A DNA stretch of 64,000 nucleotides from Ostrea edulis (GCF_947568905.1 NC_079170.1:27094001-27158000); one strand, 5' to 3'. Shown: positions 3,742-53,819, counted from the stretch's first letter. Numbers and translations: made by a program. Notes: generated from the letters alone by a model not told the origin.

Positions 3742-3799
<58 letters not shown>

Positions 3800-13852: not shown

Positions 13853-16317
13853 TATACTCGGGTGTCTAGGAGGAGTAAGCGCCCCCTGTCGACCTATGAA
13901 ACCTGTCATGAGCGCTCTATATTGATCAGGTAAACGAAATATGTAAATGCAAAAATTACCAGTGGAAAAAAATCAATTATCCAGTATATAAAACAATCGA
14001 TGCTACAAGGTGCCCATTTTTGGAAAATTCCTCTCGCTTACGAAAATTTGAATCTGCACTTTATGACGTTACAACGACCCAGCAATGTTTCCAATGGCAA
14101 GTAAAACTTCAAATTACTCGCCCTTGATTACAGGTGGCGCACGATACGTTAACGTCCAAGGCGTTTCTAACCTCAATTTTAAGAGAGCGTCGGAAGGACA
14201 CGTTTAGATTAGAAAGTTGTTGAATATTTAGTAACGATTACGGTTCGTGGTACCTCATGACATCACTATAGGTAAACAGTCCTTGCGATTTAATTTTTTA
14301 TTACGCCCATAGGACAAGCGAGAGCATAAAAATTGGCAGCTCAAATAAATTTTACTACCCCAAATGCTAGCGGTACAATAATGATCAAAGGTTTCTACAT
14401 TTTAATTAAATATAACGATTTGGAATGCAAGTTTAGGACAATAGTTCAAGCTCTCTTTCAGCTTCTAATTTACGTCTCTATTCATATGATATGATCGATA
14501 TACTATGAGTAGGTTGCACTTAAAAGCACGACTGTATCCTGCGTAGGAATGGTTATGTGCACCAACCCTTACAATCTTCTCCCACGATTAAGGATTTAGA
14601 GTTTTGGATTAGAATTTAGTTGTCAATTTTCAGGCAATATTGTGAAGTCATCTTTTCTCCCCCCCCCCCCTTTTTTTTAGACAAAGCTACGTGCCTGACT
14701 CATTGTGGTTTTAATTTTAGGTGTTGTTTTTAAAACGCATTACTTCTGGAATTCTCTATATCAATTGCATAATAACGTCGATAGAACTAAACGTCAAATA
14801 CGACTATAACACCCCCTCCCTCCCACCCCAACTCTACAATTTGACGAACTGTGCGTATAAAAAAAATATTATTTAAAATCGAAGGAACTTAAGCTTGTTT
14901 TGTCATAGATATAGTACAAACTGTTAAAACTCATTATGATGAAGAATTTGATTACATAAGCTTTACTATGTAATCTGTTTGTAAATACTATTTCTGTGAA
15001 GCTTAAGCCCGGAATGATAAGTGCGTCCTCAACTTCCGGTGTAAAAGGAGTAACTGCAAATTGTAGGCCATTAACATATTATTTTTGAAGGGGCACTTGT
15101 TTTGTGTTAACAATTTATTTCAAAATCTTCATTTGGTAACTCACATATGCTTCATGGACAGAAAAAAAGTATTTTCTTTCGAACTCCATTTTTTAGCGAT
15201 TCTTGTTGGAAAATTAAGGTTGCAGCCCAAATTTGGAAAGGAAAAATAAATTCTGGTAAAAGAAAGTTTAGTTCTACATTAGTTTTGTATTTGGATATAT
15301 TTGGACGTTTTATTTTTAAATTTATGTTTGATCAATGTCATATCTTGTATAAAGCAGTCATTTCCTATCATTTTCTGAATTCAACTTTTTAAAAATTCAG
15401 AAACATGAAGGATTTCTTATCTAAAATGTTATGTTGTCTTCATGTATATTGCCAATAATATATATCTTAGTTTTCGAATAGCTAAGTAAAGCCTAGCCTC
15501 ATTTTTTATTGGGGTCCTCAAATATCCCATTTTCCCTTTGAAGTACAGAAGCCAATATTTAATATGTTGTTTGCATGTGTTTTCTGTTTTATGTTGCAAT
15601 TAGTTAAGGTTTTGCCCATACATGGCTAGATTGACTAGACTACTTGTTTTTTTTTAAGCTTCATTTCTCGGGGAGCCTACCCCCGTCCCTGTTTGCACAA
15701 CAAAAAGCTTACACTCTCTCATTAATCTTATGCACACCGGAAGTCAACAAGAGCATTGTAATGAAGTTCTTTTAGATTTTGTGTAGGCAATAGAGAAAAG
15801 AACTTCATTACATATGATGGCAGCGGTGGGATTTTGTGATAATTGGTTTAGAGAAAAGATATTTGGTAGAATATCGGTGGTTCAGAAAAAGTTCTATCAA
15901 ATCAATCTAATTTTTGCAATTTTGATTTCAGTGCAATTTGAAAGTTTGGTTTATTGGGTTTTTTTCCTTTGCTGCTCTGGTGTGTAGTTGATAATATCAT
16001 TGCCTCAGTGGGTTCAGGACGCTGTTTAAAAGGGTCAGGACTTAATTGTCAGTGTGTCTCGAGTTGTGGAAACATGCTACGGCAGTTGATAGAGAAGAAA
16101 CAAGAGATGGAACTACAACGAATGGCCATGGAGAAAGATGCAGAAAAACAGAAACTGGACGTAGAAAGGGAAATGGAGGGAAAAAGGTTACAGGTAAAAA
16201 TGAGAAAATTAGATCTTATCCTTGGACGAATTTGGCTCCACTTTTTTGGCACGCTGTTTTGGCTATATTTAGCTCTAACACTTCATTGTTATTTCGGATT
16301 TCAAACATTTCGGTTGA

Positions 16318-16361
16318 GCATCACTGAAGAGACATTATTTGTCGAAATGCGCATCTGGTGC
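16318..16361 (+). ncRNA. Type I hammerhead ribozyme (family A), predicted cleavage after C16355
   Basis: GCAUCA-CUGAAGA-GACA(UUAUU)UGUC-GAAA-UGCGCAUC-UGGUGC: full core, 4-bp stem II, palindromic AUGCGCAU stem III, AUC site, 6-bp stem I. Confidence 0.9.
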
Positions 16362-16669
16362 ATCCAAATTGGTACCGTATAAGTTTTACATTATGACCCC
16401 TGGGTCGAGGCCTCTGCTGGTGGACTGTTAGTCCCCGAGGGTCTCTACAGCCCAGTAGCTAAGTACTTCGTTACTAGCTTGAAAATACGGATGTATATTT
16501 AATTGCTGTTATAAAATTTTAAAAATTCATTTCAAAATTAAGGATTATCTTCCTCATGCATAGTTCTTATCCTTGGACGAATTTGGCTCCACTTTTTTTG
16601 GCACGCTGTTGTGGCTATATATAGCTCTAAAACTTCATAGTTATTTCGGATTTCAAACATTTCGGTTGA

Positions 16670-16713
16670 GCATCACTGAAGAGACATTATTTGTCGAAAT
16701 GCGCATCTGGTGC
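16670..16713 (+). ncRNA. Type I hammerhead ribozyme (family A), predicted cleavage after C16707
   Basis: Identical to 16318-16361. Confidence 0.9.
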
Positions 16714-16834
16714 ATAAAAATTGGTACCGTATAAGTTTTACATCTACAGGAACAGGCAATGAAAGCCAAGGGTAAACCGGGTGATAGTGACACCAAAGAA
16801 CAGAAGCATGAGGTAAAGTAACGGCAAACTACGG

Positions 16835-17345
16835 AATGATTTCAACTTCTCCATCGTCAACTTCCCATATTTATGTAGCAACGTTCCGTTATCACCTGCA
16901 ATTGGTGTTTACATTTCTCAACTGATTCGATACGCAAAAGCTGGTTCTGCGTATGATCAGTTTTTAAATCTAAGCAGGCTACTGACAAACAAGTTGATGG
17001 TGCAAGAGTCTCGTTTAAAATCAGCATTTCGCAAATTCTATGACCGTTATATCGAACGAGTTTGCCAATACAACATATCACTGGGCCAAATGTTGTCTGA
17101 CGTGTTTCATACGGATTGTTAGACCGTCTTGGTACACTGATGTTGACTACGGATACCTCCGTTTATGTGATCTGGATATAGGGCTAACGGCGGGTGTGAC
17201 CGGTCGACAGGGGATTCTTACTCCTCCTAGACACCTGATCCCTCCTCTGGTATATCCAGGGCTCCGTGTTTGCCCAACTATCTATTTTGTATTGCTTATA
17301 GGAGTTGTGAAATTGATCACTATTCGTTATTTTCACCTTTCACCA
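16835..17345 (+). mobile_element. Naiad-type Penelope-like element, RT C-terminus plus pseudo-LTR
   Basis: DFNFSIVNFPYLCSNVPLSPAIGVYISQLIRYA...KFYDRY; shares a diagnostic deletion (GTGCAAGAGTCTCG) with 40505-40910. Confidence 0.8.
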
Positions 17346-17499
17346 GCATTCATTAATAATTCCGTGTCAGAGTAATTTTGATTTTGAAGTAGGGAGATGA
17401 CTCTTGTCCTAACTAAAACGTTACCATTCCTTAAACCTCTGTGAACCATATATTGTAGATAGGACGGCATGTTCTAGAGAAATTTTAAGGCTGCATTAA

Positions 17500-17743
17500 A
17501 GATCGTAGCGGCTAGTATAGGGCTAAGTATGATTGCTGATTTGCAGCATCTATCATCTTTTTGTCCTTTTTAGGCGACAAGAAGCTAATATTATCATTGT
17601 GTTGTCTTTTCGCTATCTCGAGACGAAAAGTCATTACAAATCGTTTTGTTGTCTTTTCACCTCGAAATAACAACACACAAACAAATGTAAAATGACACAA
17701 ATCAGTCACCATACCTATCCCCTAGGCTAGCCGCCTACGATCT
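17500..17743. mobile_element. ~245-bp MITE with ~45-bp imperfect TIRs
   Basis: GATCGTAGCGGCTAGTATAGGG...GATTTG vs CAAATCAGTCACCATACCTATCCCCTAGGCTAGCCGCCTACGATC; paralog at 41066-41309. Confidence 0.7.
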
Positions 17744-17802
17744 AGAACACAGCCCAGGTATATTGTTGGTTTCTGTAATATACTGTTGTCATCTTGTTAT
17801 GA

Positions 17803-17952
17803 TTGATTACTTTTTACGCCCTGTTCAGAATTTTTCACACGTATTGAGACATCACCAGCTGTAGGTAAAGTACCACGAAATTAGACCTATGCCTAGTATC
17901 CAGGGCCGTAGTAGTGATGGTTCTTTTTCGTGCCAACTCCTGTCGCTACCGC
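17803..17952 (-). mobile_element. Internally deleted copy of the SINE at 41366-41704
   Basis: Joins CTGTCGC|TACCGCGA; 185 bp of the paralog (41513-41697) are missing. Confidence 0.8.
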
Positions 17953-18098
17953 GATTCAAATGATGTCATTGCACATTTTCTCAATGATCAGGTGAGCGTC
18001 TCTATTTTGATATGTGTTGTTTTAATCAAAGGTTACGAAGAATACACACATGGATGGATACTGTTTGTTTTTGAAAGACTCATATTGCTCCACCAGAA

Positions 18099-18400
18099 TT
18101 ATAGCGTGTTCATTGGAAAACCAGAAAAGACATTATAAAAAGCGTGGTCATCAGTTTTGTCTTTTTGATTCAGATTCTGTCACCTTTGTTTAACAACAGC
18201 TGTAGAAGCTGACTTGCATGTGGATGTGTATTAGTTTTAAAAACAAAATAGATGTCTTTTTGCTATGTTTAGCAACATTGACATGAAAATGATTACTTCG
18301 ATGACTCATGGAGCTGCAAGGGATAATGTAGAAACTCTTCAGAGTCTACAACGTTCATAGCAAAAATACTGTTTACTCGGATTTACGCAGGTCTTAGTAA
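18099..18400 (-). pseudogene. C1q-domain pseudogene
   Basis: CSSMSHRSNHFHVNVAK...QLLQLLLNKGDRI*...YNVFSGFPMNTL* with frameshifts and Trp>TGA. Confidence 0.8.
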
Positions 18401-19904
18401 TCTGAATTTCATTTTAATAGCATCATTGAAATATGTAAGATGTTTTAAAAAGGGTTTATTTTCTTCAATGAAGTTATTTTGTTAGGCGAGACCCTGGAAA
18501 TAAAAGCACCTTCTTTCATATTGGTTTAACCTAAAACCAGACATTCTAATAATTCATTATTGTCCGATGAATGAAAATACTGAATAAAGGTTTACAGATG
18601 ATTTTGGAAAAGTCAAAGTCACCTGCATGATATAAACTTCACAAATTCTTCTTGGGATCTTGGAACTATCAGAACCTATGCATATGTAACGTTATCAAAA
18701 ACCCTAATTGTTTTAATTTTATTTGATGATAGCCGAGATCAACGACCGGTCCGAAATTCTACATCACATATCACACCGACGTGCATATTAATCCAAAAAT
18801 TACGTATTCGTTAGTAACAATCAAAGTATTTCTTGTAGTAAATCAATGTATCATTATTTCCAAAGATAATCATAATCAATGCGCATGTGCATCAAAAGTT
18901 TTTAACCAATGTATCAAATATTTACGCTTATAATAAATCAGCGCACCAAAGTGTTACCATAGTAAATCATTGCATCAAGGTTTTTATCATGGTAAATAGA
19001 GGATATCTATATTGCGTGTTTTGATATTTGGTTTATTCAACGAGTTGACATGGTGTATTTATTCGAGAGGCTTGCCGAGCGATTCATGTATATTACAAAG
19101 GGCATTTTTATAAAAGAAATCATGGATGAAAAATGTTTTAGAAGGGATATACTTTATGATTAATAATGAATTTGCCATTCCAACAAAATATTATAAACAG
19201 CTATTGATCGAGCGAGTATTTATTTTTTTTATGTAGGCCTGACCCTTTGGTTAAAGGTTTGATGTCGCTGTCTTTCTAAAAAAAATACTTGTGTAACAAC
19301 GATCATTGAAAATGGGCCTAATATTCTAATATAGCGTTATTAGAATGTTCAACATTTTACAATGAAAAGTAGAAGTGTTTGTGCATTTGTAATTTATTCA
19401 CATGGTTTCTTTGAATATAAGGGCGTGAAAAAATCCTGAGGCACTTTAGTAAGTTAGTAAGTAAAGCTGTTGAGATTTATTACATTCAATATGGCTCCAA
19501 CGAAAAGAGGTTGTACTTGTGAATGTTTAATACCGCAGCATGTCGAGGTACTTTCGATTAGGCCTGTCCAGTAAGCGGTTGATTCTTTATTGATGATAAT
19601 AGTGTGGACATCACTTTGTTTTCTTATCATAATATTTTTGAGTAGGTATTGATCGAGTTGACATTTTTATGGCCGGTAACTTGCATCTTATATCAGTGGG
19701 GTCACTATCATTTTAATTTTGTTATAAAAGAAATTCTAGATAAGTACAGAAAAACAAGTCATATGCTTTATTTCATGCATTGATATGCATCAACACGGGA
19801 AATATGTCATCCAAGCGGGGACAGTGTCAAACGTTGTTCGGACCAGAAGCTAATGCTTATCTCACTTGCAATATACAGCACATGTATGAGATAAAGTCAT
19901 ATGT

Positions 19905-21720
19905 TTAACACCACTCTGATTCACCGCACAAGTACTCTGAAAGTTGAAATAAAAAAATATGCTAGAGTTCTTCATTGACAATATCTTCGTGGTCTTTGGT
20001 GATCAGGTCTTCCAACAGTTTCTTGGAATTCCCATGGGCACGAATTGTGCTCCTTTGTTAGCTGATCTGTTTCTATATTCATAGGAAACAGAATTTATTC
20101 AAAAACTTCAAAAAATATCTCGCTGTGGTCTTCAAATCGACATTTTGATATATCGATGACGTTTTGTCTATTCACAATCATAACTTTCATTCATCTGTCT
20201 TTTTGATATATCCCTGTGAGCTCGAAATAAAGAACGCCACAGAGTCGTCCACTTCTGCTTCATACTTAGATATTTCATTGAAAGTAGACATTAACGGCAA
20301 ACTGACAACTCAACTTTGTGAAAAGCGGGGTGATTTTAGCTTCTCCCTCGTCAACTTTCCATATTTATGTAGCAATATTCCAGTATCACTTGCATATGGT
20401 GTTTATATATCTCAACTGATTTGATATGCAAGAACTCCATCTGTATATAATCAGTTTTTAACTCGAGGTAAGCTACTGACAAACAAATTGATGGTACAGG
20501 GGTTTCAACAGTCTCGATAGAAATCATAATTTCGCAAATTCGATGGTTGTTATAACGATCTAGTTCATCAATAGAACCTATCATTAGGTCAAATGCAAGG
20601 TGAAGATAACGAACAGTGATCAATCTCATAACTCCTACAAGCAATACAAAATAGATAGTTGGGCAAACACGGACCCCTGGACACACCAGAGGTGGGATGA
20701 GGTGCCTAGGAGGAGTAAGCATCCCCTGTTGACCGGTCACACCCACCGTGAGCCCCATATCCTGATCAGGTAAACGGAGTTATCCGCAGTCAAAATCAGT
20801 GTGCCAAGAACGGCTTAACAATCGGTATGAAACACTTCAGACAGCATTTGACCCAATGCGAGGTTGTATTGACGAACTAGATCGTTATAACGACCATATA
20901 ATTTGCGAAATGCTGACAAATTGTTAGGCCATTGTTGGCACACTGATTTTGACTACGGATAACTCCGTTTACCTGATCATGATATAGGGCTCACGGCGGA
21001 TCTAATCGGTCGACAGGGGATTCTTACTCCTCCTAGGCACCTGATCCCACCTCTGGTGTGTCCAGGGGTCCGTGTTTGCCAACTATTTAGATATATGAAT
21101 TCAACTCTGGGACTCCGTATCTAATAACAAAAACTCTAGAAACTCTATTCCACATGTATGTACATATCATAAGGGCATGAAAAAAATGCAGTATATGATA
21201 AGTATAATATCACATGCCAAAATCCTTGTACTATATCATATCAGCCCTCAAGTATTCGGCCCTCAGGGTGATATGACATATGACATGGATTTTAACATGT
21301 TAAATTGAGGCAGGTTACTGACAAATAAGTTGATCTTAGTGGGATTTCAACAGTCTCATTTCGCAAATTCTATGGTCGTTATGATATAATTTGCAAATAT
21401 GTCCTCTCATTAGGTTCAATGCTGTCTGGCCTGATCCATACCAATTGTTAGATCCTTTATTATATATTGATTTCAATTACGTCAAATGCTGTCTGACTTG
21501 TTTCAAACCAATTGTTATGCCGTTCTTGGCACACTGATTTTGACTACGGATAACTCTGTTAGCCCGATCAAGATGTTGGGCTAAGAGTGGATGTACCTAG
21601 TACACAGGGGATGCTTACTACTCTTCGACACCTGATTCTACCTTTGGTGTGTCAAGGGGTCCGTGTTTCCCCTACTCTCAATCTTGCATTTTTTACATAC
21701 TTGATGAGAATGATCACTTT
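19905..21720. mobile_element. Complex tandem/inverted Naiad-type Penelope-like insertion
   Basis: Plus-strand RT (GIPMGTNCAPLLADLFLYS, YIDD, ELEIKNATES) at 19905-20585, inverted 3' segment at ~20590-20915, further plus-strand pieces to 21720. Confidence 0.8.
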
Positions 21721-21814
21721 TCTCCTCGCTTTTTCATTTGATATTAGTATAACCAACAATTTGATATTTCAGATATGCAGTATATGATACATATATTATT
21801 ATACCTCAGTATGA

Positions 21815-24879: not shown

Positions 24880-26130
24880 CAATTCATCTTTATACTTTGA
24901 AATTTGTATTTGATCCAAACCTTCACAAAAATTTTTAAAGAGGTATTTTGCTGTATCCAGTAAATGATTTACCGAATCCCTATCTCTGTTCCTTGGAGAT
25001 ATATCAACTGCTTTGAATGAGATACTTCAAACGTATTCTATCACAATATATACAAGCAGTGATGTGAATCCAATGTGGATTCTCTAACATTCCAAAGAAC
25101 TTTTCAAAACTTTTAAATCACAAAGTTTTTCCCTAATGAAGAGCATCAAAACGTATGGTTTTCAACACTTTACACGATCATTCCTCACAATAAATCAAAG
25201 ACTATCTTTTTAACATCTTAAATATTGCTCTTTCAATAAAAATGGAACAGATAAAGGTTCATATTGTGATAATCATTAATAAAATTTCTTTCTTAGACAT
25301 CATTTTCATTCTACACGTAAGTACTCTCAAGTTGATATAAAAACGAGGCAGGAGTGGTTCATTGACAATATCTACGTCGTCTTTGGAGATCAAATCTTTA
25401 AACAGTCCGTTAGAATTCCCATTGACACGAATTGTGCTCATTTATTAGCCATTTTGTTAACATTCTATGAGGCAGAATTCATTCAAAACCTTCTACAAGA
25501 GAAGAAAAAATGTCTTGCTGTGGTCTGGCGTGTTTAAATATATCGACGTTTTACCTATTCACAATGTCTATTTCTATTAATATGTTGATGTGATATATCC
25601 CTATGAACTCGAAATAAAAGACACCAAAGATTCTTTTCGATATCCCATTCATATTTTGATATCTCATTGAACACATATGTTCATGACAAACTGACAACTC
25701 AACTTTATGACTACTTCAGCTTCTCCATCGCCAACTTCGAATATTGATGCAACAATATTCTATTATCACTTGCATGTGTTGTTTATGTCTCTCAACTGAT
25801 TAGATACATGAGAACATGTTCTATGGTCAATTTTTGATCAAGGCAAGTTACTGTCAAATAAGTTAATGTTAGGGGGTTTCAAAAGTCTTGTGTGACGTCA
25901 GAATTTTGCAAATTAATGCTCTTGTTTGAAAATACAACCTGTTGTTAGGTCGAATGTTGGCTGACGTATTCCATACCAATTGTTAGACTGTTTTTAAGAT
26001 ACTCGGTTTAACTGCGGATTACCCCGTTTACATCATCAGGATGTAGGGCTCACGGCGGGTTTGACCGGAAAAGGGGATGATTACACCGCTTAGGCACCTG
26101 ATCTTATCTCTGGTGTGTCCCGGGATTAGT
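24880..26130 (+). mobile_element. Decayed Naiad-type RT plus pseudo-LTR in the intron of gene A (antisense)
   Basis: Remnants of MWIL..SKEL, motif A (IKTY.FSTLYT.IPH), IPLTRIVL (ex-GIPMGTNCA) and VNF; paralog at 50180-51530. Confidence 0.75.
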
Positions 26131-26229
26131 ACTACCCATGCACTGCAAGTTCAGTGGCTATTTTTTTCATCTTCGTTTTGCTTTTTATTCCTTCAATTAC
26201 AAAAATAAGAAGATTGTAATCATACTTAC

Positions 26230-26281: not shown

Positions 26282-27733
26282 GTTTTTTTCTGAAAAAGAT
26301 ATATCAAAACAATTATATATATCTCTTATATTAGCGCCAAAATTTGCAATATCTTCAGATCAGTTCACATTTTCATTAATGCAGTCAAAATAGTGAGTGT
26401 TAGATTAGATTTCAGGATCTCTATTGTCACCTTCACATTCGTCAAACTTATTTTCAAATCAATCGTCATTATGATCACATATTACTAATCTCCAAAAAAA
26501 GAAACCAATGTATGATATTGTACACGATATATCATATTGTACACAAAATCACATTGTAAACCATACCCAGCTGACGTATTTTTATTCATCATATTTTCAC
26601 AAATAGTTCTCAAATGCTTTCTTCATTGTCTACCGATTTCACACAAAAATACACAGAATCATTAACTTATGCATATATCATCTATTTTACTGCGTTTATC
26701 AGAACTTCATTTTAAAATCATCAATGAATTGTGTATGCTGTTTGTAACATGTTACATAATATACAATGGTGGGTATCTTCTAGGGGAGAATATGAGTTAG
26801 GGGGATATGATGATGAGATGAAAGTAGTCAGATTCATCTAAAAATCATTTTATCATAGAAAGGTGGTTTCTTCTGTTTGAAAAATGACAAATTATATATA
26901 TATGTCAATGAGTTGTTTCTATGGAAACAACCCCTGAACCCAACAATGTTGCAAAAAACACCAAAGGCTAAAATTTAGCAGTTGTAGATCCAAAAATATG
27001 TACAACAAACAAACAGGTTGTAAAATGAATATATTTAAGGACCATGATACAAAGAGTATATGTGATGTGGAAATATTTTAAATGGAACACAAAAACAAAT
27101 TACCCAAAATCCAGTCCGAATTTCCTCAGCGCCTCTAAAAATATCTTTTTGAGGATAGAGTTTTCTAGGAAAATGGCTAAAACATTTACTGAATGTAATT
27201 GGATTTTAACTATTTTGCTATGATCTAATGACGGCATCCATGGCTACAGGACTAACCACAACTATTGGCATATTAATGAATTGGATAAAAAGATATGATG
27301 ATCTGAAGGTCATCAGAGGTCATTGAAAATTGCTACAAACAGAAATTGGACCGATTATTCTTTCTCTACAACACATTTTTTGAAAACATCAAACACAACG
27401 TTTAAATATTATGCTCTTAAAAGTAATTAATTTGTGAAAATGATTTAGTTGGTATCAAACGGATTCAATTTGGAAACCAAACGGTCTTAATTTCCTCTGT
27501 CTTTTTGCGTTTGAGAGTTAATTGTTAAGATAAACGCCAAAAAATTGTATCCTGTATGAATGTATATAGATTTTTTTGAAATTTCATTTTAAAAATACAT
27601 AAAGGTACCGAACCAAATAAAAAAAACTTATAGATATCACTGACCAACCTAAATATACTGATCTCATTAAAACTTTAATACTTTAGAGATTATTTAACGA
27701 CTATAATCAAATTTTTGGCTCGGATTGTTTTGA

Positions 27734-27991
27734 ATGTAAAACTTATACGGTACCAATTTTGATGCACCAGATGCGCATTTCGACAAATAATGTCTCTTCA
27801 GTGATGCTCAACCGAAATGTTTGAAATCCGAAATAATTATGAAGTTTTAGAGCTAAATATAGCCAAAAACAGCGTGCCAAAAAAGTGGAGCTAAATTCGT
27901 CCAAGGATAAGAGCTATGCATGAGGGAGATAATCCTTAATTTTGAAATGAATTTCTAAATTTTATAACAGCAATTAAATATACATCCGTAT
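27734..27991 (-). mobile_element. Retrozyme-like repeat, partial unit with one hammerhead
   Basis: Reverse complement of the 16214-16743 unit. Confidence 0.85.
27764..27807 (-). ncRNA. Type I hammerhead ribozyme (family A), site at 27770
   Basis: Identical core and stems on the minus strand. Confidence 0.9.
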
Positions 27992-29294
27992 ATACAGCCT
28001 CATTTTGCTTCGAAAAAATAATTCAATCAATCAATAATCTGACATCCGATATTGATACAGTTGCGCCTTAGTATTTAATAATCTAAGATAGTCTTGTGCC
28101 ATTAGTTGTAACTGAATCAGTGTAATTTATTTTAGTAAAAGTATCAACTGTGAAAAAAATAAATAATAAAATTGACATGAATCAACGGATGATCGACACA
28201 TTCTAATTGGATCATTAGTGATTTAACTAGATACTCACTTAAATAAATTACATAACGTAGATCTACATAACTATGTACCACTCTAAACTGCAAATATTGT
28301 TTACATGCATGTATAAATTATTTGATTGTTATTGATTCTAACTATTCTTAAGTTTCAACCAATATTCTGGGGAAATTAAAAACCTTTCGAAAAGGGAAGG
28401 GGTGTAACAAGGTGGGTGCACTAAACATTTTCATAAAACTTTTAATGAATTTGGAGAAACTGATCAGTGATCAATCTCATAACTCCTATAAGGAATATAA
28501 AATAGATAGTTGGGCAAACACGGACTCCTGGACACACCAGAGGGGGGATCAGGTGCCTAGAAGGAGGGAGGGGTTAGTGCTTCATCTCCTCTAGATCCCC
28601 ATCTTTATTGTTTTAAAAAATTACACAAGAATTATAATCAAATGTTTGGTTTGGTTTTCTTTTTACGCAATCTGGGGAGGGGTGGGATCGGGTCTATGTG
28701 AATATGGAATTTGAGTAACAAATATGCCTGTTTTAAAGAAGAAGAGAGGCAGTCTGGAACACGCGTTCAAGTCTCCCCCCCCCCCACCTCACCCCGATCT
28801 GCAAATGAAAATTAGATTTGGTATAATGCATGTACTATGTTAGATTTAAAGCATACAATCATTATTTGATGAGAGCAGATACAGGATGATAAGTAAGTTT
28901 TGATTTTGCCGATTCCGCATTTCCTCTGTTTTATGTCATAGACACGTATCGGCCGATCTTATTTTAAATCCAAACATCTAACATTATATGATTTTGATTC
29001 AAATAAGCAATTAAACTTACGTACATTTCATTTATTTTTGCCCCAAAAAATGCATGCATGCACAATTCATTTGGAGCCATTTTCTTTGATGAGTAAATCG
29101 ATCGGTAATAAATTCCACCATGCATATGCAGAAATCAGTGCTAAATAATTCGTAGCCTGCTTTGTATTTTTCTACTTATTATAGTACTTGAGGTTGCATG
29201 TATCATAAATGAACCAATGAATTGCATTAAATAATTCACAACACTCAGACAGTATATACATGTTTTTCCCTAAAATATCTCTAGCAAATTTATC

Positions 29295-29398
29295 GTTATT
29301 TCGGACTTCAAACATTTCGGTTGAGCATCACTGAAGAGACATTATTTGTCGAAATGCGCATCTGGTGCATCAAAATTGGTACCGTATAAGTTTTACAT
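29295..29398 (+). mobile_element. Retrozyme-like repeat, 104-bp 5'-truncated copy
   Basis: Same 3' end (AAGTTTTACAT) as the other copies. Confidence 0.85.
29325..29368 (+). ncRNA. Type I hammerhead ribozyme (family A), site at C29362
   Basis: Identical core and stems. Confidence 0.9.
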
Positions 29399-41704: not shown

Positions 41705-41829
41705 ATTCAAATCATGTCATTGCACATTTTCTCAATTATCAGGGGAGCGTCTCTATTTTCATATATATTGTTATACACACATGGATGGATACTGCTTGTC
41801 TTTTAAAGACCCATATTGCTCCACCAGAA

Positions 41830-45070: not shown

Positions 45071-45145
45071 TTTAATTTGACATATGAAAAACTTGGTGAA
45101 TGTTAGGCATGCTACTTACCCAAGGCATATATGAACGTTAAGAGA

Positions 45146-45967: not shown

Positions 45968-46013
45968 ATATGCTTGGTTGGTTTTGCTGACAAGGATGAG
46001 TGTAAAAGGCGGT

Positions 46014-46830: not shown

Positions 46831-46849
46831 ACAAGCCCTGTGTTAGAAG

Positions 46850-47580: not shown

Positions 47581-49067
47581 TTACGCTGTACCAATTTCAA
47601 TGGCCACGCCGTTTGGAAGAATGTTCCAGAAAGGAAGTGATGTGTACGTGTCAATATATATTAGACTATTGCAGAATTAAATTTCCCGGAATAAATAAAA
47701 ACAAGCCCCCCTCCCCCTTCCCTTTTAGTAAAAACTGACAAGGATACAGTTACGGAGATAAATGCACATAACCAACACAAGCTTAAATATGCGATAATAG
47801 TATATATCAAAGTTAAGTTTTCTACAATAATTATTTAAAATTTCAAGTAAGACTCCCTTTGAATTTAATAATCTCGGTTTCCATGCTGCTTTTAATGCTT
47901 TTAATTTGCATTCTACATCTACTATTGAAAGACCGCCTCTTGTTACATCTCCAACCAAAGTGTTTCGTTTGATTTTTTCTTTTTTATCCCAAATGAAGTT
48001 AAAGATTAATCGTTGTACCTTTTTTATAAAGTCTTTATCAGGAAGACATAGCATTGACGATACATATTTTAATTTTGAAATGGCAAGTGTATTTATTATG
48101 CATGCTTTGCCAAAAAGTGTTAATTTTCTTCTCTTCCAGGATTCAAACAGTTTTTCCATTTAGTTATATATTCTCATCCAATTTTTATTATAACATTCTT
48201 CTTTATCGTGACCTAAAAATGCCTAGACACTTGACCGCTTTACTTCTAACTCTAATACGAAAAGGTTCTTCAAACTGATTTGTCAATCTTCCAAGCAAAA
48301 TACATTCAGTTTTGTTGATATTAATTTTATAGCCAACACTTTCACAGAATTTATTTATTTGCATAGACTTTTGAACATAGCTGTTATATGTAGTCGTGCA
48401 ACGAAAGTTTCAAAAATGTTCATAATCCAATGTTTTGTTTTCCCATTTATGTCTTTTGTTAGATCGACTTGGTGTCATTTGAAAAGAAAAACTTTTCATT
48501 AGGAGCGAAGTCTTTATGAAAGGTGAAGATAACGAAAATTGATCAATATCATTACTCCTATAACCAATACAAAATAGAGAGTTCGGCATAAATTCAAATA
48601 TTTAATGTAACTCTACTTTTAAAAACATTGTGTTTCCTGTTTGAATCCGTTCAGAAGTTGCATATTTCATGTTTCTCGCGTACTTGGAAATCAGCTAATA
48701 TATTCTGACAAGGTTTTTGGATAGCATGTTTCTATGTAATGTCAGAAGTAGAATGTCTTTATTAAGAGTGACCAATTTACGTGAACTGCTACTTTAAAAT
48801 AATTTTTAAAAAATTAATGGAAGTATGTAAAATAAACAAAACCCTTATGACTCTGGTGTTCTAAAACTAGAACCATTTCTGACTTAGCAGTAGCTATTTA
48901 ACTATAAATCAGTTGGAACGTTAAGTTTCAATTCTGATACCATCATCTCATTGAAGTTACTCAACACAAATCGGAGTATATTATGAATATTTGAATTTTC
49001 CATAACTATGTCAAAAACAACAGGTCTTCTTCCTCTGCAATATCGTTTATTCATTATCGACACCAGT

Positions 49068-49468
49068 TTACAGTTCATCTATCAGAAAACCAGAAAACAC
49101 ATTATACACTTTACCATCAAGCATCTTTGCTGCAACATTATTATTGTTCCGCATCCATATTTTGTCGCCTTTGTTAAGTAATAACTGTAAGGTCTGACTG
49201 GATTGTGGATAGGTTTTGGCTGCAGAAAACACCACGGATAATTTGATACCATTCTTCATTATTCCTAGATGAACAGAATTACTTGGATAACTCATCAAAC
49301 TACAGGAGATGCTGTAGAGACCGTTATAGGGGGCGGTAAAAACACCAGTTGTTGGTTGATAGGCTCCGCCCCAATTCGTCAACACGTGATCATACTTCAC
49401 CACAGCATAAGCGCCCACTGTTGTTTCTTTGGACAGAAGGGCTGTGAAGGCAACACTCGCCCCTCTCT
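49068..49468 (-). CDS. C1qDC gene B, C1q-domain exon (CDS = complement join 51671..51722, 49068..49468; 150 aa)
   Basis: Intact gC1q; acceptor TAGCAG at 49469, phase 1; 13 of 132 aa differ from gene A. Confidence 0.92.
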
Positions 49469-50179
49469 CTGCTACACATGAATTACATCTTAGTACTTTG
49501 TGCATTTTGTGAATATCTTTTTAAAAATGTTAATGTTCTAAAATTTCCAAAGAGTAGAAATGTCCGATGTTGCCACTAGCAATATGCAGTTTTTATTTTA
49601 TACCACCTAATATCATCGTACCTAAGCGAACTATATCTAGTGTTAAAACGATTTAGGTTGTCAATACAACCTATCGTTAGGTTAAATGGTATCTAAGGTG
49701 TTTCAGACCGATTGTGAGAGCGTTTTGGCACAGCGATTTTGACTGTAAGATAATTCCGTTTACCTGATCAAGATCCCTACTCCTCCTAGATGTATCCAGG
49801 GGACGGTGTTTACCAACTTTATTTTGAAATTGCTTACTGGAGTTATGAGATTGATCACTGTTCGTTATCTTCACCTTTCTTCTAATGTCTAGTACAAGTA
49901 TTCTAATCAATATTCATATCAGTAACATCTTGTGTACAAAGATATATTGATAACGTTATTCAAATATCATAAAGACTTTCTGCTTTCTCTTTTTCAAAAT
50001 ACGTAAAGCTAACGTCTTTTCATTTCAAATCATTATGTGACAAAATACTCAAAACGACAATGAATTGTAACACAATTTGGTAAATGTGATCATGTACTTA
50101 ATATCCTATGCCAACTACCGTTAGCAGATACTAGTAATATAATTTTAAGTCAATATATTTGCTCACAGAAGGGAAACAA

Positions 50180-51530
50180 TACTTTAGTACTTTACAAGAA
50201 ATAATAATCAATCAATCTTTATGCTTTGAAATCTGCATTTGATCCGAAACTTCACAAACACTTTTAAAGAGGTCTATCCAGTAAATGATTTACTTAACCC
50301 CTATGTTTGTTCCTTGGAGATATATAAACGGCTCTGAATGAGATACTTCAAACGTATTATATCACAACATATGCGAGAAGTGATGCGAATCCAATGTGGA
50401 TTCTCTAACATTCCAAAGAACCTTTCAAAACTCTTAAATCACAAACTTTTCCCTAAAGAAGAGCATCAAAACGGATGATGTTCAACACTTTACACGACCA
50501 TTCCCCACAATGAATTAAAGACTAGCTTTTTAACATCTTAAATAGCTGCTCTTTCGATAAAAGTGGAACACCTAAATGTTAATATGTTGTGAGATTCTTT
50601 AACAAATTTCTTTCTTTGACATAATTTTCATTCTACATGTCAGTGCTCTCAAGTTGATATAAAAATGAGGCAGGAGTTCTTCATTGACAATATCAACAAA
50701 TTATTTAGAGATCAAGTCTTTAAACAGTCCTTTGAAATTTCCAATGGCACGAATTGTGCTCATTTATTAGCCGAATTATTTTAACATTCCTATGAGACAG
50801 AATTCATTCAAAATCTTCTACACGAGAAGAAAAAATATCTTGTTGTTGTCTGGTGTGTTTAGATATATCGATGTTTTATCTATTGACAATGTCTATTTTT
50901 ATTAATATGTTGATTTCATATATCCATATGGACTCGAAATAAAAGACACCAAAGAGTATTTTCCATACCCAATTCATATTTTGATATCTCATTGAGCACA
51001 GATGTTCACGACAACTGACAACTCAACTTTATGTTGAATTCAGCTTTTCCATCGCCAACTTTGAATATTTATGTAACAATACTCCATTATCACCTGCATA
51101 TGGTGTTTATGTCTCTCAACTGATTTAATACGCGAGAACATGTTCTGTATATAATGAATGTTTAATCAAGGCAAGCTAAATAAGCTAAAGTTAGAGGGGT
51201 TTCAAAAGTCTCGGGTGTTGTCAGAATTTTGCAAATTAATACTCTAATTTGCAAATACAACCTGTCATTAGTTCGAATGCTGGCTGACGTATCCCATACC
51301 AATTGTTTGACTGCTCTTAGTATACTCATTTTGACTGCGGATTACTCCGTTTACATGATTAAGATGTAGGGCTCACGGCGAATGTGACCGGAAAGGGGAT
51401 GATTACTCCGCTTAGGCACCTTATCTCATCTCTGGAGTGTACAGGGATTCGTATTTCCCCTATTTTTTGTATTTTCCCTATTCTTCATTTTGTACTCTTC
51501 ATGGGCTATTTGAGATTGATCACTGTTCAT
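50180..51530 (+). mobile_element. Decayed Naiad-type RT plus pseudo-LTR in the intron of gene B
   Basis: Paralog of 24880-26130. Confidence 0.75.
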
Positions 51531-51670
51531 AATCTTAATAATTATAATAATAATCTTTATTTATAATCTTCGCTCTTCATTACTCATGCGCTATATATTC
51601 AGTGGCTATTTTATCTTCATTTTTTTTATTCCTTCAATTACAAAAGTAACAAGATTGTAATCATACTAAC

Positions 51671-51722
51671 GACAACCAGAAACGAATCCCAGTACAGCAA
51701 GAAAAAGAACACACTTCATCAT
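51671..51722 (-). CDS. C1qDC gene B, signal-peptide exon (MMKCVLFLAVLGFVSGC + 1 nt)
   Basis: Acceptor TTTTTCAG upstream, donor C|GTTAGT at 51670. Confidence 0.88.
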
Positions 51723-52422
51723 GTTTCTTCTGAAAAACATATATTAAATAATTTACATATTTCTCTGATATGAGAGCCAACATTTGCAATATCTTCAGAT
51801 CAGTTCACATTTTTATAAACGCAGTCAAAATGTTGAAAGTGTTAAATTAGATGTTAGGATCTCTATTGTCTCGTTTGCATTCGTCAAACTTATTTTCGAA
51901 TCAATCATCATTATGATTCACATATTACTAATCTCCAAAAATAACCAATATATCATATCTTACAAAATATATCATATTGTACACAAAATCATAATATTGT
52001 AATTCATACCCAGTTGACGTACTCTTATTTATCATATTTTCACAAATACTTCTCAAATGCTTTCTTTATTGTCTACCAATTACACACAAAAATACACAAA
52101 ATTACTAACTTATGCATATATTATCTATTTTACTGCGTTTATCAGAATTTCATTTTAAAATCATCAATGAATTGTGTACGCTGTTTGCAACATGTTATAT
52201 AGTATACAATGAAGGGTATCTTGTAGGGGAGAAAATGGGTTAGAGGAATATGATGCTGAGATGAAAGTAATTAGATTCTTCTGAAAATCATTTTATCACA
52301 GAAAGGAAGTCTCTCCTGTCGAATAAATGACATCTTTTATAAATGTTAATAACTTCGTTTCCATGGAAACAACCCCTGAACATAACAATATTATGTAAAA
52401 CTTACACGGTACCAATTTTGAT

Positions 52423-52466
52423 GCACCAGATGCGCATTTCGACAAATAATGTCTCTTCAGTGATGA
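52423..52466 (-). ncRNA. Type I hammerhead ribozyme (family A), site at 52429
   Basis: Core intact; outermost stem I pair mismatched. Confidence 0.85.
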
Positions 52467-52775
52467 TCATCCGAAATGTTTGAAATCCGAAATAATAATG
52501 AAGTTTTAGAGCTATTATAGCCAAAAACAGCGTACCAAAAAATGTGGCGTCAAATTCGTTTAAGGATAAGAGCTATGCTTGAGCGAGATAATCCTTAATT
52601 TTGAAAAATGAATTTCAAAATTTTATAACAACAATTATATATACATCTGTATTTTCAAGCTAGTAACGAAGTACTTAGCTACTGGGCTGTAGAGACCCTC
52701 GGGGACTAACAGTCCACCAGCAGAGGCCTCGACCCAGGGGTCATAATGTAAAACTTATATGGTACCAATTTGGAT

Positions 52776-52819
52776 GCACCAGATGCGCATATCGACAAAT
52801 AATGTCTCTTCAGTGATGC
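52776..52819 (-). ncRNA. Hammerhead motif with core mutation GAAA>GAUA (probably inactive)
   Basis: A at 52791 changes conserved A14 to U. Confidence 0.75.
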
Positions 52820-53819
52820 TCATCCGAAATGTTTGAAATCCGAAAAAACAATGAAGTTTTAGAGCTATTATAGCCAAAAACAACGTGCCAAAAAAGTGGA
52901 ATCAAATTCGTCAAAGGATAAGACCTATGTATGAGGGAGATAATCCTTAATTTTGAAATAAATTTCTAAATTTTATAACAACAATGAAATATACATCCGT
53001 ATTTTCAAGCTAGTAACGAAGTACTTAGCTACTGGACTGTAGATAGTTATACCATAATTAAACATTCCACCATCCATTTATTGGATATGTACAATCATGT
53101 TAATGTGCATGATTATGCATAACTGAATTTTGTGGCTTTCCTTGAATATTTTTGTCTGCTATTATGAAATTTTATTGTTTGTCGTTTGGAATTACAAACA
53201 TTATTGATAAAAACTAAGTCATCAATTTCATTTAAATCTGCATTATTATACATTTTATGAAGATGAGAAGCATTTTCTATTTCTAGGTTGTTTGTGTTAC
53301 AGGGAGATAACAACAATGGAAACATGGCGGATTCGCTAAGTCACTAACACTCGTGTTATTATATTCATAGTACAAAAACACATTCCTTCCAAAAGAAAGT
53401 GCACAGTGCCTATCACGTGTATTTTATCATATAATCCTTCATATCAAAGGTAACAACATTGTTCATAGTATTCATCATATTAGTTGTTCAAACAAACTTT
53501 TATGAAACTCAATTTTGCACTTGTCTTTTCGTGAGTTTAAATAAACTAACAGAAAATGATAGAAAAACATTGAACTTACCTACTGTGTATTAAGCCTCTG
53601 AATGAAAGATCGATTTGTCGTGGGCACGTATGTTTTGTTTATATACAGACAGTTTTGTGTTGTCGTGTGTATTGTTTTCATTTTAATTGCCTAAATTCCT
53701 ATATAATTGACGCCAATTACATGGAAGACTTTTTCCTTCCTATCCAGGCAGATTTCAGAGCAATAAAATATTTTTGTAGCATTAACTTCAACCTACCAAG
53801 GATATAGAACACACATTAA

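What the first reader, a model, noticed from the sequence alone, without database searches (positions are those of the whole stretch)
16214..53043. Retrozyme-like system: six hammerhead ribozyme motifs in four insertions of a ~352-nt tandem unit
Seen: GCATCA-CTGAAGA-GACA-TTATT-TGTC-GAAA-TGCGCATC-TGGTGC occurs at 16318, 16670 and 29325 (+) and at 27764, 52423 and 52776 (-). It has the full CUGANGA/GAAA core, stem II, a self-complementary stem III (AUGCGCAU), an AUC cleavage triplet and a 6-bp stem I. Successive sites are 352 nt (16355-16707) and 353 nt (52429-52782) apart. The spacer has further hairpins (GACCC/GGGTC, GGACT/AGTCC). Known: type I hammerheads in tandem non-coding repeats define non-LTR retrozymes, which self-cleave to monomers and circularise; these have been reported in metazoans including mussels. 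Inferred: this oyster-type family yields ~352-nt circRNAs. It would be masked as a plain satellite by standard annotation.
Basis: partly seen in the sequence, partly recalled or inferred. Interest (0 to 1): 0.88.

Follow-up and report, generated by a model that had tools for sequence, protein, structure and literature searches.

The report
Hammerhead retrozyme family in oyster-like genome
The four repeats are copies of a small non-coding mobile element that carries a self-cutting hammerhead RNA motif; this kind of element (an animal "retrozyme") is already known from mussels, corals and salamanders, so this is a well-documented new family and not a new kind of system.

Summary
Six copies of a 44-nt type I hammerhead lie at the stated coordinates, in four insertions of a 351-353-nt ORF-less unit. 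Five have an intact catalytic core. The sixth (52776-52819, minus strand) reads GAUA instead of GAAA and is probably dead.

Genome-wide there are 7,275 exact copies of the 32-nt core, on all chromosomes. Every insertion examined ends at the same base, 36 nt past the predicted cut site. The 5' ends are variably truncated, lengths run from 0.35 to 3.7 units, and no target-site duplication is seen. Catalytic A6, A9 and A14 carry about half the variants of the free N7 and loop-II positions. A sister family (78% identical) keeps the ribozyme, a 56-nt hairpin with one compensatory pair, and the same 3'-end geometry.

This fits a non-LTR retrozyme. It was probably copied by a Penelope-like element, but I did not identify the partner.

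Circular RNA is not shown: the RNA-labelled runs hold the element, but DNA carry-over cannot be excluded. I retracted my own "fossil of cleavage" test after controls.

The kind is known (Cervera & de la Peña 2020), so this is a new member. The scan already holds 150 notes mentioning retrozymes in this genome.

The parts
16210..16743 (+). Insertion A: unit positions 206-352, a full unit 1-352, then the 36-nt tail (1.5 units). It is the only insertion in the window with two intact hammerheads. 97.4% identical to the family consensus.
   Evidence: blastn of the unit against the window; boundaries and flanks; identity
16318..16361 (+). Hammerhead A1 (stem I GCAUCA/UGGUGC, CUGAAGA, stem II GACA-UUAUU-UGUC, GAAA, palindrome AUGCGCAU, C17). 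Predicted cut after C16355.
   Evidence: (RF00163 31.2 bits, model 1-45)
16670..16713 (+). Hammerhead A2, identical to A1. Predicted cut after C16707.
16356..16707 (+). The 352-nt cut-to-cut monomer that double self-cleavage of a transcript of insertion A would release. I used it as the reference unit (u1-u352).
   Evidence: release itself is inferred and not shown
16400..16455 (+). Conserved 56-nt hairpin (u45-u100). It is the most conserved part outside the ribozyme in the sister family, with one compensatory pair (u54-u88, G-C to U-A).
16708..16743 (+). 36-nt 3' tail (u1-u36, ending ...AAGTTTTACAT). This is the invariant 3' terminus of all insertions.
27733..27991 (-). Insertion B: u130-u352 plus tail (0.74 unit), with one intact hammerhead at 27764-27807. 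It is the youngest copy in the window (99.2% to consensus).
29275..29398 (+). Insertion C: u266-u352 plus tail (0.35 unit), with one intact hammerhead at 29325-29368. 94.3% to consensus.
52390..53043 (-). Insertion D: u89-u352, a full unit, then the tail (1.86 units). 93.9% to consensus, the oldest copy in the window.
   Evidence: (TRF period 353, 1.9 copies)
52423..52466 (-). Hammerhead D2 (3'-most in the element). The core is intact; the outermost stem I pair is lost (U instead of G).
52776..52819 (-). Hammerhead D1 with GAUA instead of GAAA (A14 to U). It is probably catalytically dead, so insertion D cannot release a monomer by double cleavage.
   Evidence: one of 54 such A14 variants genome-wide; loss of activity follows from established hammerhead mutagenesis and was not tested here

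Best explanation

Shown here:
- The unit is 351-353 nt, has no ORF, and carries one minimal type I hammerhead with every conserved core nucleotide.
- Helix III is an 8-nt palindrome. It can form a stable helix only between two ribozyme copies (a double hammerhead).
- The family has at least 7,275 perfect cores in about 7,000 loci on all chromosomes.
- Insertions always end at the same base, 36 nt downstream of the predicted cut. Their 5' ends are truncated at variable positions. They span 0.35 to 3.7 units and show no target-site duplication in the one site with empty paralogues.
- Catalytic positions vary about half as much as free positions.

Inferred:
- Transcripts that contain two ribozymes pair them through helix III and cut after C17. 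[quoted passage not shown]
- The lone ribozyme in a monomer circle has too weak a helix III to re-cut efficiently.
- A reverse transcriptase supplied in trans starts cDNA at a fixed internal site (u36) and runs across the cut-site junction on a circular or multimeric template. It stops after a variable distance, which gives the fixed 3' end, the 5' truncation and the multi-unit copies.
- The enzyme most likely comes from a Penelope-like element. A resident RT plus GIY-YIG element has the same layout: its own minimal hammerhead, with the cut site about 40-46 nt from its 3' end (exact end blurred by TA microhomology).
- A linear read of a source locus can never yield more ribozymes than the source has. 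Keeping two-ribozyme copies in the population therefore argues for rolling-circle copying or template switching.
For: Motif and significance: (6 matches, 0 in shuffles). Ribozyme model: (RF00163, full length, 31.2 bits, E 1e-6). Dimer helix III: (-27.3 kcal/mol for two copies against 2 x -7.8).

Copy number: 3,728 + 3,547 exact cores, reversed-pattern control 0; 8,136 junction-plus-tail matches; copies 96-98% identical on all chromosomes.

Insertion anatomy. In 34 insertions the 3' end is at u36 +/- 3. The 5' starts fall at u1, 3, 89, 112, 129, 130, 135, 179, 201, 206, 214, 226, 239, 266, 273, 279, 301, 302, 310, 314, 316, 331 and 334. One insertion has an inverted 47-nt piece at its 5' end (L022).

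Empty site. The L002 insertion lies between CATATT and TATG of a repeat whose two window copies are uninterrupted.

Units per locus: in the first 100 places there are 69 single, 11 double and 3 triple junction loci.

Selection on the core: with the other 31 nt exact (7,275 exact cores), variants number 90 at A6, 75 at A9 and 54 at A14, against 144 at N7 and 147 at the loop II A. N7 and loop variants recur within tandem arrays.

Sister family in L069 and L070 (78% identical): same stems and core, a different loop II, the hairpin conserved with a G-C to U-A compensatory pair, and a tail ending about 33 nt after the cut.

No ORF.

Literature: PMC7229834 and PMC7761336 define non-LTR retrozymes, including a 350-390-bp mussel family. 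PMC8557442 describes 5' truncation, partial tandems and a 30-40-bp tail in Penelope-like elements. bioRxiv 10.64898/2026.07.22.740005 relates vertebrate retrozymes to Penelope pLTRs.
Against: No RNA evidence for cleavage or circles. Only assembled contigs could be laid. They include insertion-flank junctions and an unrelated repeat at similar depth, so DNA carry-over or read-through transcripts could explain them.

Rfam's own cut-off is not reached (31.2 against 34 bits).

The whole unit is not more stably folded than shuffles (z -0.8 and -1.3), unlike the 'highly self-paired' circles described for other retrozymes.

The partner is not identified. There is no significant similarity between the unit and the 3' UTR of the resident Penelope-like element. 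That element ends in (TA)n in most copies, whereas only about 6 of 33 retrozyme insertions do.

An excess of 5' ends at the cut site, which would have been a fossil of cleavage, did not survive controls.

The selection test rests on five sites and ignores site-specific mutation rates.
Confidence: 0.85

Rival explanations
1. It is a SINE-like element that carries a hammerhead but is mobilised by a LINE reverse transcriptase that is not of the Penelope type. The ribozyme only trims transcripts, and circles play no part.
For: A fixed 3' end with variable 5' truncation is the general signature of target-primed reverse transcription and is not specific to Penelope-like elements. No sequence link to the resident Penelope-like element was found. 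The strong (TA)n preference of that element is only weakly shared (about 6 of 33).
Against: There is no poly(A) or simple-repeat 3' tail, and no target-site duplication in the one site that could be checked. Multi-unit copies of up to 3.7 units and a 5' inverted piece (L022) match Penelope-type insertions (PMC8557442). The cut site lies 36 nt from the 3' end, similar to the ~40-46 nt measured in the resident Penelope-like element. Minimal palindromic-helix-III hammerheads are the type found in Penelope pLTRs (PMC7761336).
Confidence: 0.1
2. The copies are 5'-truncated terminal repeats (solo pLTRs) of an autonomous Penelope-like element whose coding part I did not sample. They are not an independent non-autonomous element.
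For: Penelope insertions are mostly 5'-truncated and leave terminal pieces with a hammerhead (PMC8557442; one search shows this for the resident family). A second hammerhead family in the window (3482-4362) is exactly such a derivative of a coding element.
Against: In all 34 insertions, the sequence upstream of u37 is u36 of another unit or unrelated flank, and never a coding region. Units repeat at exactly 351-353 nt, up to 3.7 times. None of 30 GIY-YIG loci has this unit as its 3' UTR; the two that contain it carry ordinary nested insertions. A unit trimer has no ORF over 56 codons.
Confidence: 0.04
3. It is an ordinary satellite or minisatellite spread by DNA-level processes (unequal crossing-over, segmental duplication), and the hammerhead-like motif is incidental.
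For: Tandem Repeats Finder reports insertion D as a plain 353-bp repeat. Some copies are clearly spread by duplication of larger segments: six loci share a 2.1-kb carrier repeat, and there are regularly spaced hits on C2, C6 and C8.
Against: About 7,000 dispersed loci sit on all chromosomes with unrelated flanks. One end is invariant and the other truncated. One precise insertion stands against empty paralogous sites. Every core nucleotide of the ribozyme is present, and catalytic positions show a two-fold deficit of variants. The ribozyme is conserved in a 78% sister family.
Confidence: 0.01

Closest known systems
Non-LTR retrozymes of metazoans, especially the Mytilus galloprovincialis family (Cervera & de la Peña 2020, PMC7229834; review PMC7761336)
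   Same: Type I hammerhead in each unit. ORF-less tandem units of 350-390 bp in the mussel (351-353 here). Thousands of genomic copies (~5,000 hammerheads in the mussel; 7,275 exact cores here). The ribozyme lacks the loop-loop tertiary contacts. Penelope-like elements are present in the same genome.
   Different: Circular RNA was shown by northern blot and RT-PCR in the mussel and is not shown here. The published accounts state that the repeats show no motif that points to the mobilising element. Here every insertion has a fixed 3' end 36 nt past the cut, with 5' truncation. The whole-unit fold here is not unusually stable. I did not compare the sequence with the mussel family.
Minimal type I hammerheads in pseudo-LTRs of Penelope-like elements (Cervera & de la Peña 2014, as cited in PMC7761336; Craig et al. 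2021, PMC8557442)
   Same: The ribozyme is minimal, with no real helix III loop, a palindromic centre and predicted action as a dimer. Insertions are 5'-truncated and in partial tandems. A 30-40-bp 'tail' is present. There is an occasional inverted 5' piece. Some insertions lie in (TA)n.
   Different: There is no RT or GIY-YIG reading frame. The repeat unit is only 352 nt. There is no detectable sequence similarity to the 3' UTR of the resident element. The (TA)n preference is much weaker.
Newt and salamander satellite 2 hammerheads and the Schistosoma Sm-alpha SINE-like element (seed-type members of Rfam RF00163; my own knowledge, plus PMC7229834 for the salamander)
   Same: Type I topology. 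Helix III is too short to fold alone and has a GC-rich palindrome; the Rfam consensus itself reads ACGCGCGU at that place. The motif is embedded in a ~170-350-nt repeated unit.
   Different: The unit sequences are different. The score against RF00163 is below the family cut-off. The host is a mollusc.
Plant LTR retrozymes (Cervera et al. 2016, PMC4918200)
   Same: Non-autonomous retroelements whose transcripts are cut by hammerheads and are proposed to act as circular templates.
   Different: Plant elements have type III hammerheads inside LTRs, a primer-binding site, a polypurine tract and 4-bp target-site duplications, and they depend on Gypsy elements. None of these features is present here.

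Membership tests
Hammerhead ribozyme, type I (Rfam RF00163) | Conserved core C3 U4 G5 A6 N7 G8 A9 ... G12 A13 A14 A15.1 ... U16.1 H17 | tested here: met
   CUGAAGA, GAAA, and A...U flanking the palindrome followed by C17 are present in five of six motifs. The sixth has A14 changed to U.
Hammerhead ribozyme, type I (Rfam RF00163) | Three helices around the core, with helix I open (5' and 3' ends) and helices II and III closed | tested here: met
   The Infernal alignment covers model positions 1-45 with all pairs standard. Stems I (6 bp) and II (4 bp) fold in the isolated 44-mer. Helix III forms only between two copies, as in the family consensus.
Hammerhead ribozyme, type I (Rfam RF00163) | Score at or above the curated gathering cut-off (34 bits) | tested here: not met
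   31.2 bits. There is no hit at gathering threshold in the window and no hit in a 901-nt search. The shortfall is 2.8 bits, with E 1e-6 for the stretch searched.
Hammerhead ribozyme, type I (Rfam RF00163) | Site-specific self-cleavage 3' of H17 | not testable with these tools
   Needs transcription and a cleavage assay. My indirect test, counting 5' ends of insertions at the cut site, was inconclusive.
Non-LTR (metazoan) retrozyme | Short (about 170-400 bp) tandem units, each with a type I hammerhead | tested here: met
   Units of 351-353 nt, each with one hammerhead.
Non-LTR (metazoan) retrozyme | No coding capacity; no LTR, PBS or PPT | tested here: met
   The longest open frame in a unit trimer is 56 codons. 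Units abut directly with no terminal repeats other than the unit itself. PBS and PPT were not searched for explicitly.
Non-LTR (metazoan) retrozyme | Dispersed multicopy family, that is, mobile | tested here: met
   7,275 exact cores on all chromosomes, unrelated flanks, and one insertion with empty paralogous sites.
Non-LTR (metazoan) retrozyme | Expressed as unit-length linear and circular RNA | tested here: inconclusive
   RNA-labelled runs from three studies hold contigs confined to the element, and two cross the cut site. However, these are contigs only, flank junctions are present, and DNA carry-over is not excluded.
Non-LTR (metazoan) retrozyme | Co-occurrence with Penelope-like elements | tested here: met
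   At least 1,102 GIY-YIG candidates. Intact 973-aa and 787-aa ORFs with RVT_1 and GIY-YIG domains.
Penelope-type insertion (non-autonomous derivative) | Frequent 5' truncation with a common 3' end; partial tandems | tested here: met
Penelope-type insertion (non-autonomous derivative) | [quoted passage not shown] | tested here: met
   Every insertion carries 36 nt (u1-u36) beyond the last cut-to-cut unit. The figure is about 33 nt in the sister family and 40-46 nt in the resident coding element.
Penelope-type insertion (non-autonomous derivative) | Sequence homology of the unit to the pLTR or 3' UTR of an autonomous element in the same genome | tested here: not met
   The best local alignment to the 3' UTR of the one resident family I could read scores 29, and 20 of 300 shuffles do as well. 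Other Penelope families in the genome were not examined.
Penelope-type insertion (non-autonomous derivative) | Insertion bias for (TA)n microsatellites | tested here: inconclusive
   About 6 of 33 independent insertions abut (TA)n or TA-rich runs. Most copies of the resident Penelope-like element do.

The most novel reading that the evidence does not exclude
The invariant cDNA start 36 nt downstream of the cut site, the multi-unit copies and the near-geometric fall-off in unit number would be genomic evidence of two things. First, an animal retrozyme is reverse-transcribed by rolling round a circular RNA from a fixed internal priming site. Second, the module 'hammerhead plus 33-46-nt tail', shared in geometry with coding Penelope-like elements, is what the Penelope enzyme recognises. 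That would give the long-unexplained Penelope hammerhead a role in defining or presenting the 3' end of the template, and not only in cutting transcripts.
Probability: 0.3. Interest if true: 0.6.

Novelty: new member of a known kind. Interest (0 to 1): 0.35.

Why it matters
It adds an oyster-type bivalve family to the animal retrozymes. The family is large (at least 7,275 perfect ribozyme cores), with copies in this window 94-99% like the consensus.

Published descriptions say that animal retrozyme repeats show no motif pointing to the element that mobilises them. Here three features give concrete handles for testing the Penelope hypothesis: the invariant 3' end 36 nt past the cut, the 5' truncation, and the matching geometry in a resident Penelope-like element. 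The conserved 56-nt hairpin gives a handle for mapping what the reverse transcriptase recognises.

Practically, standard Rfam annotation misses this ribozyme. Repeat finders would label the element a satellite.

Tried and rejected
1. Rfam. The gathering scan of the window gave no hit. A 901-nt E-value scan gave no hammerhead, and only a 71-nt scan found it. RF00163 over the whole genome was uninformative: 85,583 candidates, 73 scored, best 25.6 bits elsewhere.

2. 'Fossil of cleavage'. I first saw 319 copies with a non-C base before u1, against 91 and 91 at two control positions, and read this as 5' ends at the cut site. One search showed that 211 such copies still have the ribozyme upstream, so they are C17 variants. 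A strict count requiring three non-consensus bases upstream gave 20 at the cut site, against 4, 9, 13 and 21 at four control positions. That is at most about two-fold, so I withdrew the claim. In my sample of 33 insertions, 4 start at u1-u3 (L012, L022, L028, L041). This is suggestive only.

3. C17 'hypervariability'. The variant fraction is 2.7% (211 against 7,705), only slightly above the free loop site at 2.0%. It is therefore not a special scar. The spectrum (A about equal to T, G rare) fits tolerance of H17 but proves nothing.

4. Partner search. The six loci with identical flanks turned out to be a 2.1-kb ORF-less repeat carrying a nested copy. The L062 hit is a decayed, internally deleted copy. 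Local alignment to the Penelope 3' UTR was not significant.

5. RNA. Only contigs were available, so no starts, ends, strand or back-splice junctions could be read. No joints were reported.

6. Whole-unit folding is not more stable than shuffles on either strand. No second ribozyme was found on either strand.

7. No target-site duplication could be found at any of 34 junction pairs by eye. No paralogous empty sites exist in the data in hand for the window's own four insertions.

8. I found no paper on oyster retrozymes or hammerheads in the library.

Full report
THE OBSERVATION

The 32-nt core of the motif occurs six times in the window: five exact copies and one with a single mismatch. One hundred dinucleotide-preserving shuffles gave none. 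The spacings of 352 and 353 nt are correct.

Two motifs differ from the rest. The one at 52423 has lost the outermost stem I pair. The one at 52776 reads GAUA where the core needs GAAA.

I took the cut-to-cut stretch 16356-16707 as the reference unit (u1-u352). Mapped against the window it gives four insertions:
- A, 16210-16743 (+): u206-352, a full unit, then u1-36.
- B, 27733-27991 (-): u130-352, then u1-37.
- C, 29275-29398 (+): u266-352, then u1-36.
- D, 52390-53043 (-): u89-352, a full unit, then u1-39.

IS IT A HAMMERHEAD?

Rfam at its gathering thresholds reports nothing in the window, and a 901-nt E-value search also missed it. When only 71 nt are searched, RF00163 (Hammerhead_1) aligns over its whole length (positions 1-45) at 31.2 bits, with E 1e-6, just under the cut-off of 34.

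Every conserved nucleotide is present: C3 to A9, G12 to A14, the A15.1-U16.1 pair and C17. Stem I has 6 bp, one of them G-U. Stem II has 4 bp with a 5-nt loop.

'Stem III' is the palindrome AUGCGCAU with no loop. The isolated 44-mer therefore folds only stems I and II (-7.8 kcal/mol). Two copies cofold at -27.3 kcal/mol through an 8-bp intermolecular helix III. This is the double-hammerhead arrangement known for newt, Schistosoma and Penelope ribozymes. The review PMC7761336 states that the weak helix III of many type I motifs prevents cleavage as monomers but not as dimers.

No other Rfam family, and no ribozyme of the opposite polarity, is found in the unit.

THE FAMILY IN THE GENOME

The assembly has 895 Mb in 52 contigs, and the window is C7:27,094,001-27,158,000.
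- The exact 32-nt core occurs 7,275 times (3,728 forward, 3,547 reverse). The reversed-pattern control gives 0.
- The cut-site junction with 28 nt of tail occurs 8,136 times.
- The forty best full-length matches are 96-98% identical to the window unit (the query's own locus 100%) and lie across the ten large contigs.
- Among the first 100 junction matches there are 83 loci: 69 with one junction, 11 with two and 3 with three.
- About one locus in six therefore has two junctions a full unit apart. About 7% have two perfect cores a unit apart (7 pairs in about 93 loci).
- The window's copies are 99.2% (B), 97.4% (A), 94.3% (C) and 93.9% (D) identical to the consensus of 40 full units, so these four copies differ in age.
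- A unit trimer has no open frame longer than 56 codons.

INSERTION ANATOMY

I determined both ends of 34 insertions: 30 fetched loci and the window's four.
- All end at u36 (+/- 3 nt, where the flank happens to match), with ...AAGTTTTACAT.
- The 5' ends are scattered over the whole unit.
- Lengths run from 124 nt to 1,309 nt (3.7 units).
- One insertion (L022) has a 47-nt inverted piece of the element at its 5' end.
- I saw no target-site duplication.

One insertion (L002) lies in an abundant repeat of which the window holds two uninterrupted copies. The empty sites read CATATT-TATG-TAGCAA. The filled site has the element, plus one extra C, between CATATT and TATG. This shows a true insertion without duplication.

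About six of 33 independent insertions abut (TA)n or TA-rich runs (L014, L022, L024, L026, L028, L041).

A fixed 3' end with 5' truncation is the mark of target-primed reverse transcription. Craig et al. (PMC8557442) describe frequent 5' truncation, partial tandems, adjacent inverted 5'-truncated copies and a 30-40-bp tail at one end as features of Penelope-like elements.

All insertions of about 40 nt or more contain the cut-site junction. The template was therefore continuous across the cut site: either an uncleaved multimer or a religated circle.

A linear read from a genomic source can only yield as many ribozymes as the source has, and 5' truncation removes some. A family that keeps about 17% multi-junction copies therefore needs a way to regain units. 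Rolling-circle copying of a monomer circle, or template switching, would provide one. This last step is inference.

IS THE RIBOZYME UNDER SELECTION?

I counted single-base variants inside the 32-nt core while requiring the other 31 nt to be exact (7,275 exact cores).

| Position | Role | Variants |
|---|---|---|
| N7 | free | 144 |
| loop II A | free | 147 |
| A6 | catalytic | 90 |
| A9 | catalytic | 75 |
| A14 | catalytic | 54 |

All five sites are adenines. The catalytic ones carry about half the variants (mean 73 against 146).

N7 and loop variants also recur in neighbouring units of the same array, for example four N7=C units at C2:71.74 Mb. That is expected if such variants are passed on by active lineages.

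Position 17 varies at 2.7% (211 against 7,705), mostly to A or U, which the hammerhead tolerates.

The test is limited to five sites and ignores site-specific mutation rates.

A SISTER FAMILY

A scan of metagenome contigs with the core, loop II left free, found two records.

L069, from a marine metagenome, carries a 5'-truncated unit, a full 350-nt unit and a tail. It is 78% identical overall to the consensus.
- Its ribozyme stems and core are identical. Loop II differs (UUAUU to UGUAU).
- Its second ribozyme was not selected by the search and has one change, in the palindrome.
- Conservation is uneven: the ribozyme and u37-u100 are 89% identical, against 63-70% for u101-u300.
- In the hairpin u45-u100, two of the four differences form a compensatory G-C to U-A pair (u54-u88) and the other two lie in an internal loop.
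- The terminal copy departs from the internal copy about 33 nt after the cut, so the 3'-end geometry is conserved too.

The 25 core bases required by the search are biased by ascertainment. Stem I, the hairpin and the second ribozyme are not.

PENELOPE-LIKE ELEMENTS IN THE SAME GENOME

The Pfam GIY-YIG family gives at least 1,102 candidates.

[quoted passage not shown] L065 holds a 787-aa frame of the same kind, repeated every 3,717 bp.

About 25 of 30 GIY-YIG loci carry, roughly 750 nt past the endonuclease domain, a different minimal hammerhead. The element ends about 40-46 nt after that ribozyme's cut, with the exact end blurred by TA microhomology. It then either runs into (TA)n or continues into the next copy as a partial tandem.

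The geometry 'cut site a few tens of nt from the 3' end' is therefore shared with the retrozyme. The sequences are not related: the local alignment score of 29 is reached by 20 of 300 shuffles. The retrozyme's (TA)n preference is also much weaker. The partner is therefore not identified. After I could fetch no more genome DNA to look at other Penelope families.

RNA

Runs labelled RNA from several studies hold the unit. I laid four of them, from three studies, and all four held it. Only Logan contigs could be laid.
- One 377-nt contig (X1) runs u11 to u352 to u36.
- One 321-nt contig (X7) runs u67 to u36.
- Both cross the cut site, and neither enters the flanks of insertion A.
- In an oligo-dT metatranscriptome (X17), only the ribozyme-tail part (u334-u33) is present.
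- Other contigs join the element to foreign sequence at u302, u333 and u36. These are genomic-type junctions.
- An unrelated repeat next to insertion A has similar depth.
- In X3 the ribozyme-tail part is 10-30 times deeper than the middle of the unit. I cannot explain this.

These data show presence in RNA-labelled libraries. They do not show transcription, cleavage or circles.

A TEST THAT FAILED

I expected reverse transcriptase to run off at the ribozyme-made 5' end. I found 319 copies with a non-C base before u1, against 91 and 91 at two control positions. But 211 copies have a non-C base at position 17 with the ribozyme intact upstream, so most of the 319 are C17 variants.

Requiring three non-consensus bases upstream leaves 20 at the cut site, against 4, 9, 13 and 21 at four control positions. 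That is at most a two-fold excess, and I do not claim it.

COMPARISON WITH WHAT IS KNOWN

Non-LTR retrozymes were defined by Cervera and de la Peña (PMC7229834): type I hammerheads in 170-400-nt ORF-less tandem repeats, expressed as circular RNAs in a coral, a mussel (350-390-bp units, about 5,000 hammerheads) and the axolotl, with Penelope-like elements proposed as mobilisers. A 2026 preprint (10.64898/2026.07.22.740005) relates vertebrate retrozymes to Penelope pLTRs.

This element meets the structural definition, so it is a new member of a known kind.

What seems to be added is the insertion-junction analysis. [quoted passage not shown] I found no mention of tails or target sites, and only a passing one of 5' truncation of Penelope elements themselves, in the 2026 preprint. 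I found no paper on oysters.

The scan itself already holds 150 notes mentioning retrozymes in this genome. This is therefore a repeated finding on other DNA of the same genome.

VERDICT

It is a known kind of element. The family is large and its ribozyme appears to be under selection. The mechanism is well supported at the DNA level and untested at the RNA level.

Noticed in passing
window 3482-3655 and 4188-4362 (+): A second hammerhead family: two ~175-nt units, each with a minimal ribozyme (CCUGACGA...GAAAAUUU, then GAC). They are 80-84% similar to the last ~100 nt of the 3' UTR of a coding Penelope-like element (L067/L068). Each ends 40 nt after its cut site, next to TA-rich sequence or (TA)n.
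   Followed up: partly
L045 (G000:C9:52624592-52627843), about 350-560 in the orientation of the ORF: A third minimal hammerhead family (AACUGU CUGAAGA GGC-AUUAAA-GCC GAA AGCGCU A). It is present as a head-to-head inverted pair of short 3' ends, each ending about 48 nt after its cut site. The pair sits between microsatellites, next to a 5'-truncated Penelope-like element.
   Followed up: partly
L005, L006, L015, L016, L017, L029 (e.g. L016:300-2395): A ~2.1-kb ORF-less repeat, 97-98% identical between six loci on different chromosomes. It carries a nested 440-nt retrozyme copy (u301 to u37), so some retrozyme copies multiply as passengers of another repeat.
   Followed up: partly
window 16836-17066, 20175-20565, 1665-1816, 25570-25745, 51074-51236: An abundant dispersed repeat, also present in many fetched loci. 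It hosts the L002 retrozyme insertion and supplied the empty-site comparison. Its nature was not determined.
   Followed up: no
L065 (G000:C1:110501500-110511499): A Penelope-like element in head-to-tail tandem every 3,717 bp. It has a 787-aa RVT_1 plus GIY-YIG frame, preceded by an overlapping 406-aa frame with no Pfam match. My pattern scan found no hammerhead there. Many genomic copies have identical GIY-YIG scores, often as inverted pairs.
   Followed up: partly
window 16270-16395 and 16617-16747, run X3: In one small RNA-labelled library, the ribozyme-plus-tail part of the unit (about u270 to u36) has 10-30 times the contig depth of the middle of the unit. Five-prime truncation of DNA copies would give far less. 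This is unexplained.
   Followed up: no
G000:C1:26560277-26560351: Two 36-nt tails (u1-u36) lie head to tail 38 nt apart, each preceded by A. Isolated 36-nt tails without an upstream ribozyme also exist: 16 of the 20 strict hits do not continue past u36.
   Followed up: no
genome-wide, position 17 of the ribozyme: Variants of the cleavage-site C are about equally A and T, and rarely G (about 40, 47 and 13 of the first 100). Free sites in the core show mostly transitions. This could be tolerance of H17, a subfamily, or an effect of the junction. It is not resolved.
   Followed up: partly
L062:2775-2901 (-): An old retrozyme copy (88% identical) with an internal deletion that fuses stem II of the ribozyme directly to the last bases of the tail.
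   Followed up: partly
window 420-1041 and 63510-63933: Two minisatellites unrelated to the finding: a 28-bp unit x 22 (82% matches) and a 21-bp unit x 20 (67% matches).
   Followed up: no
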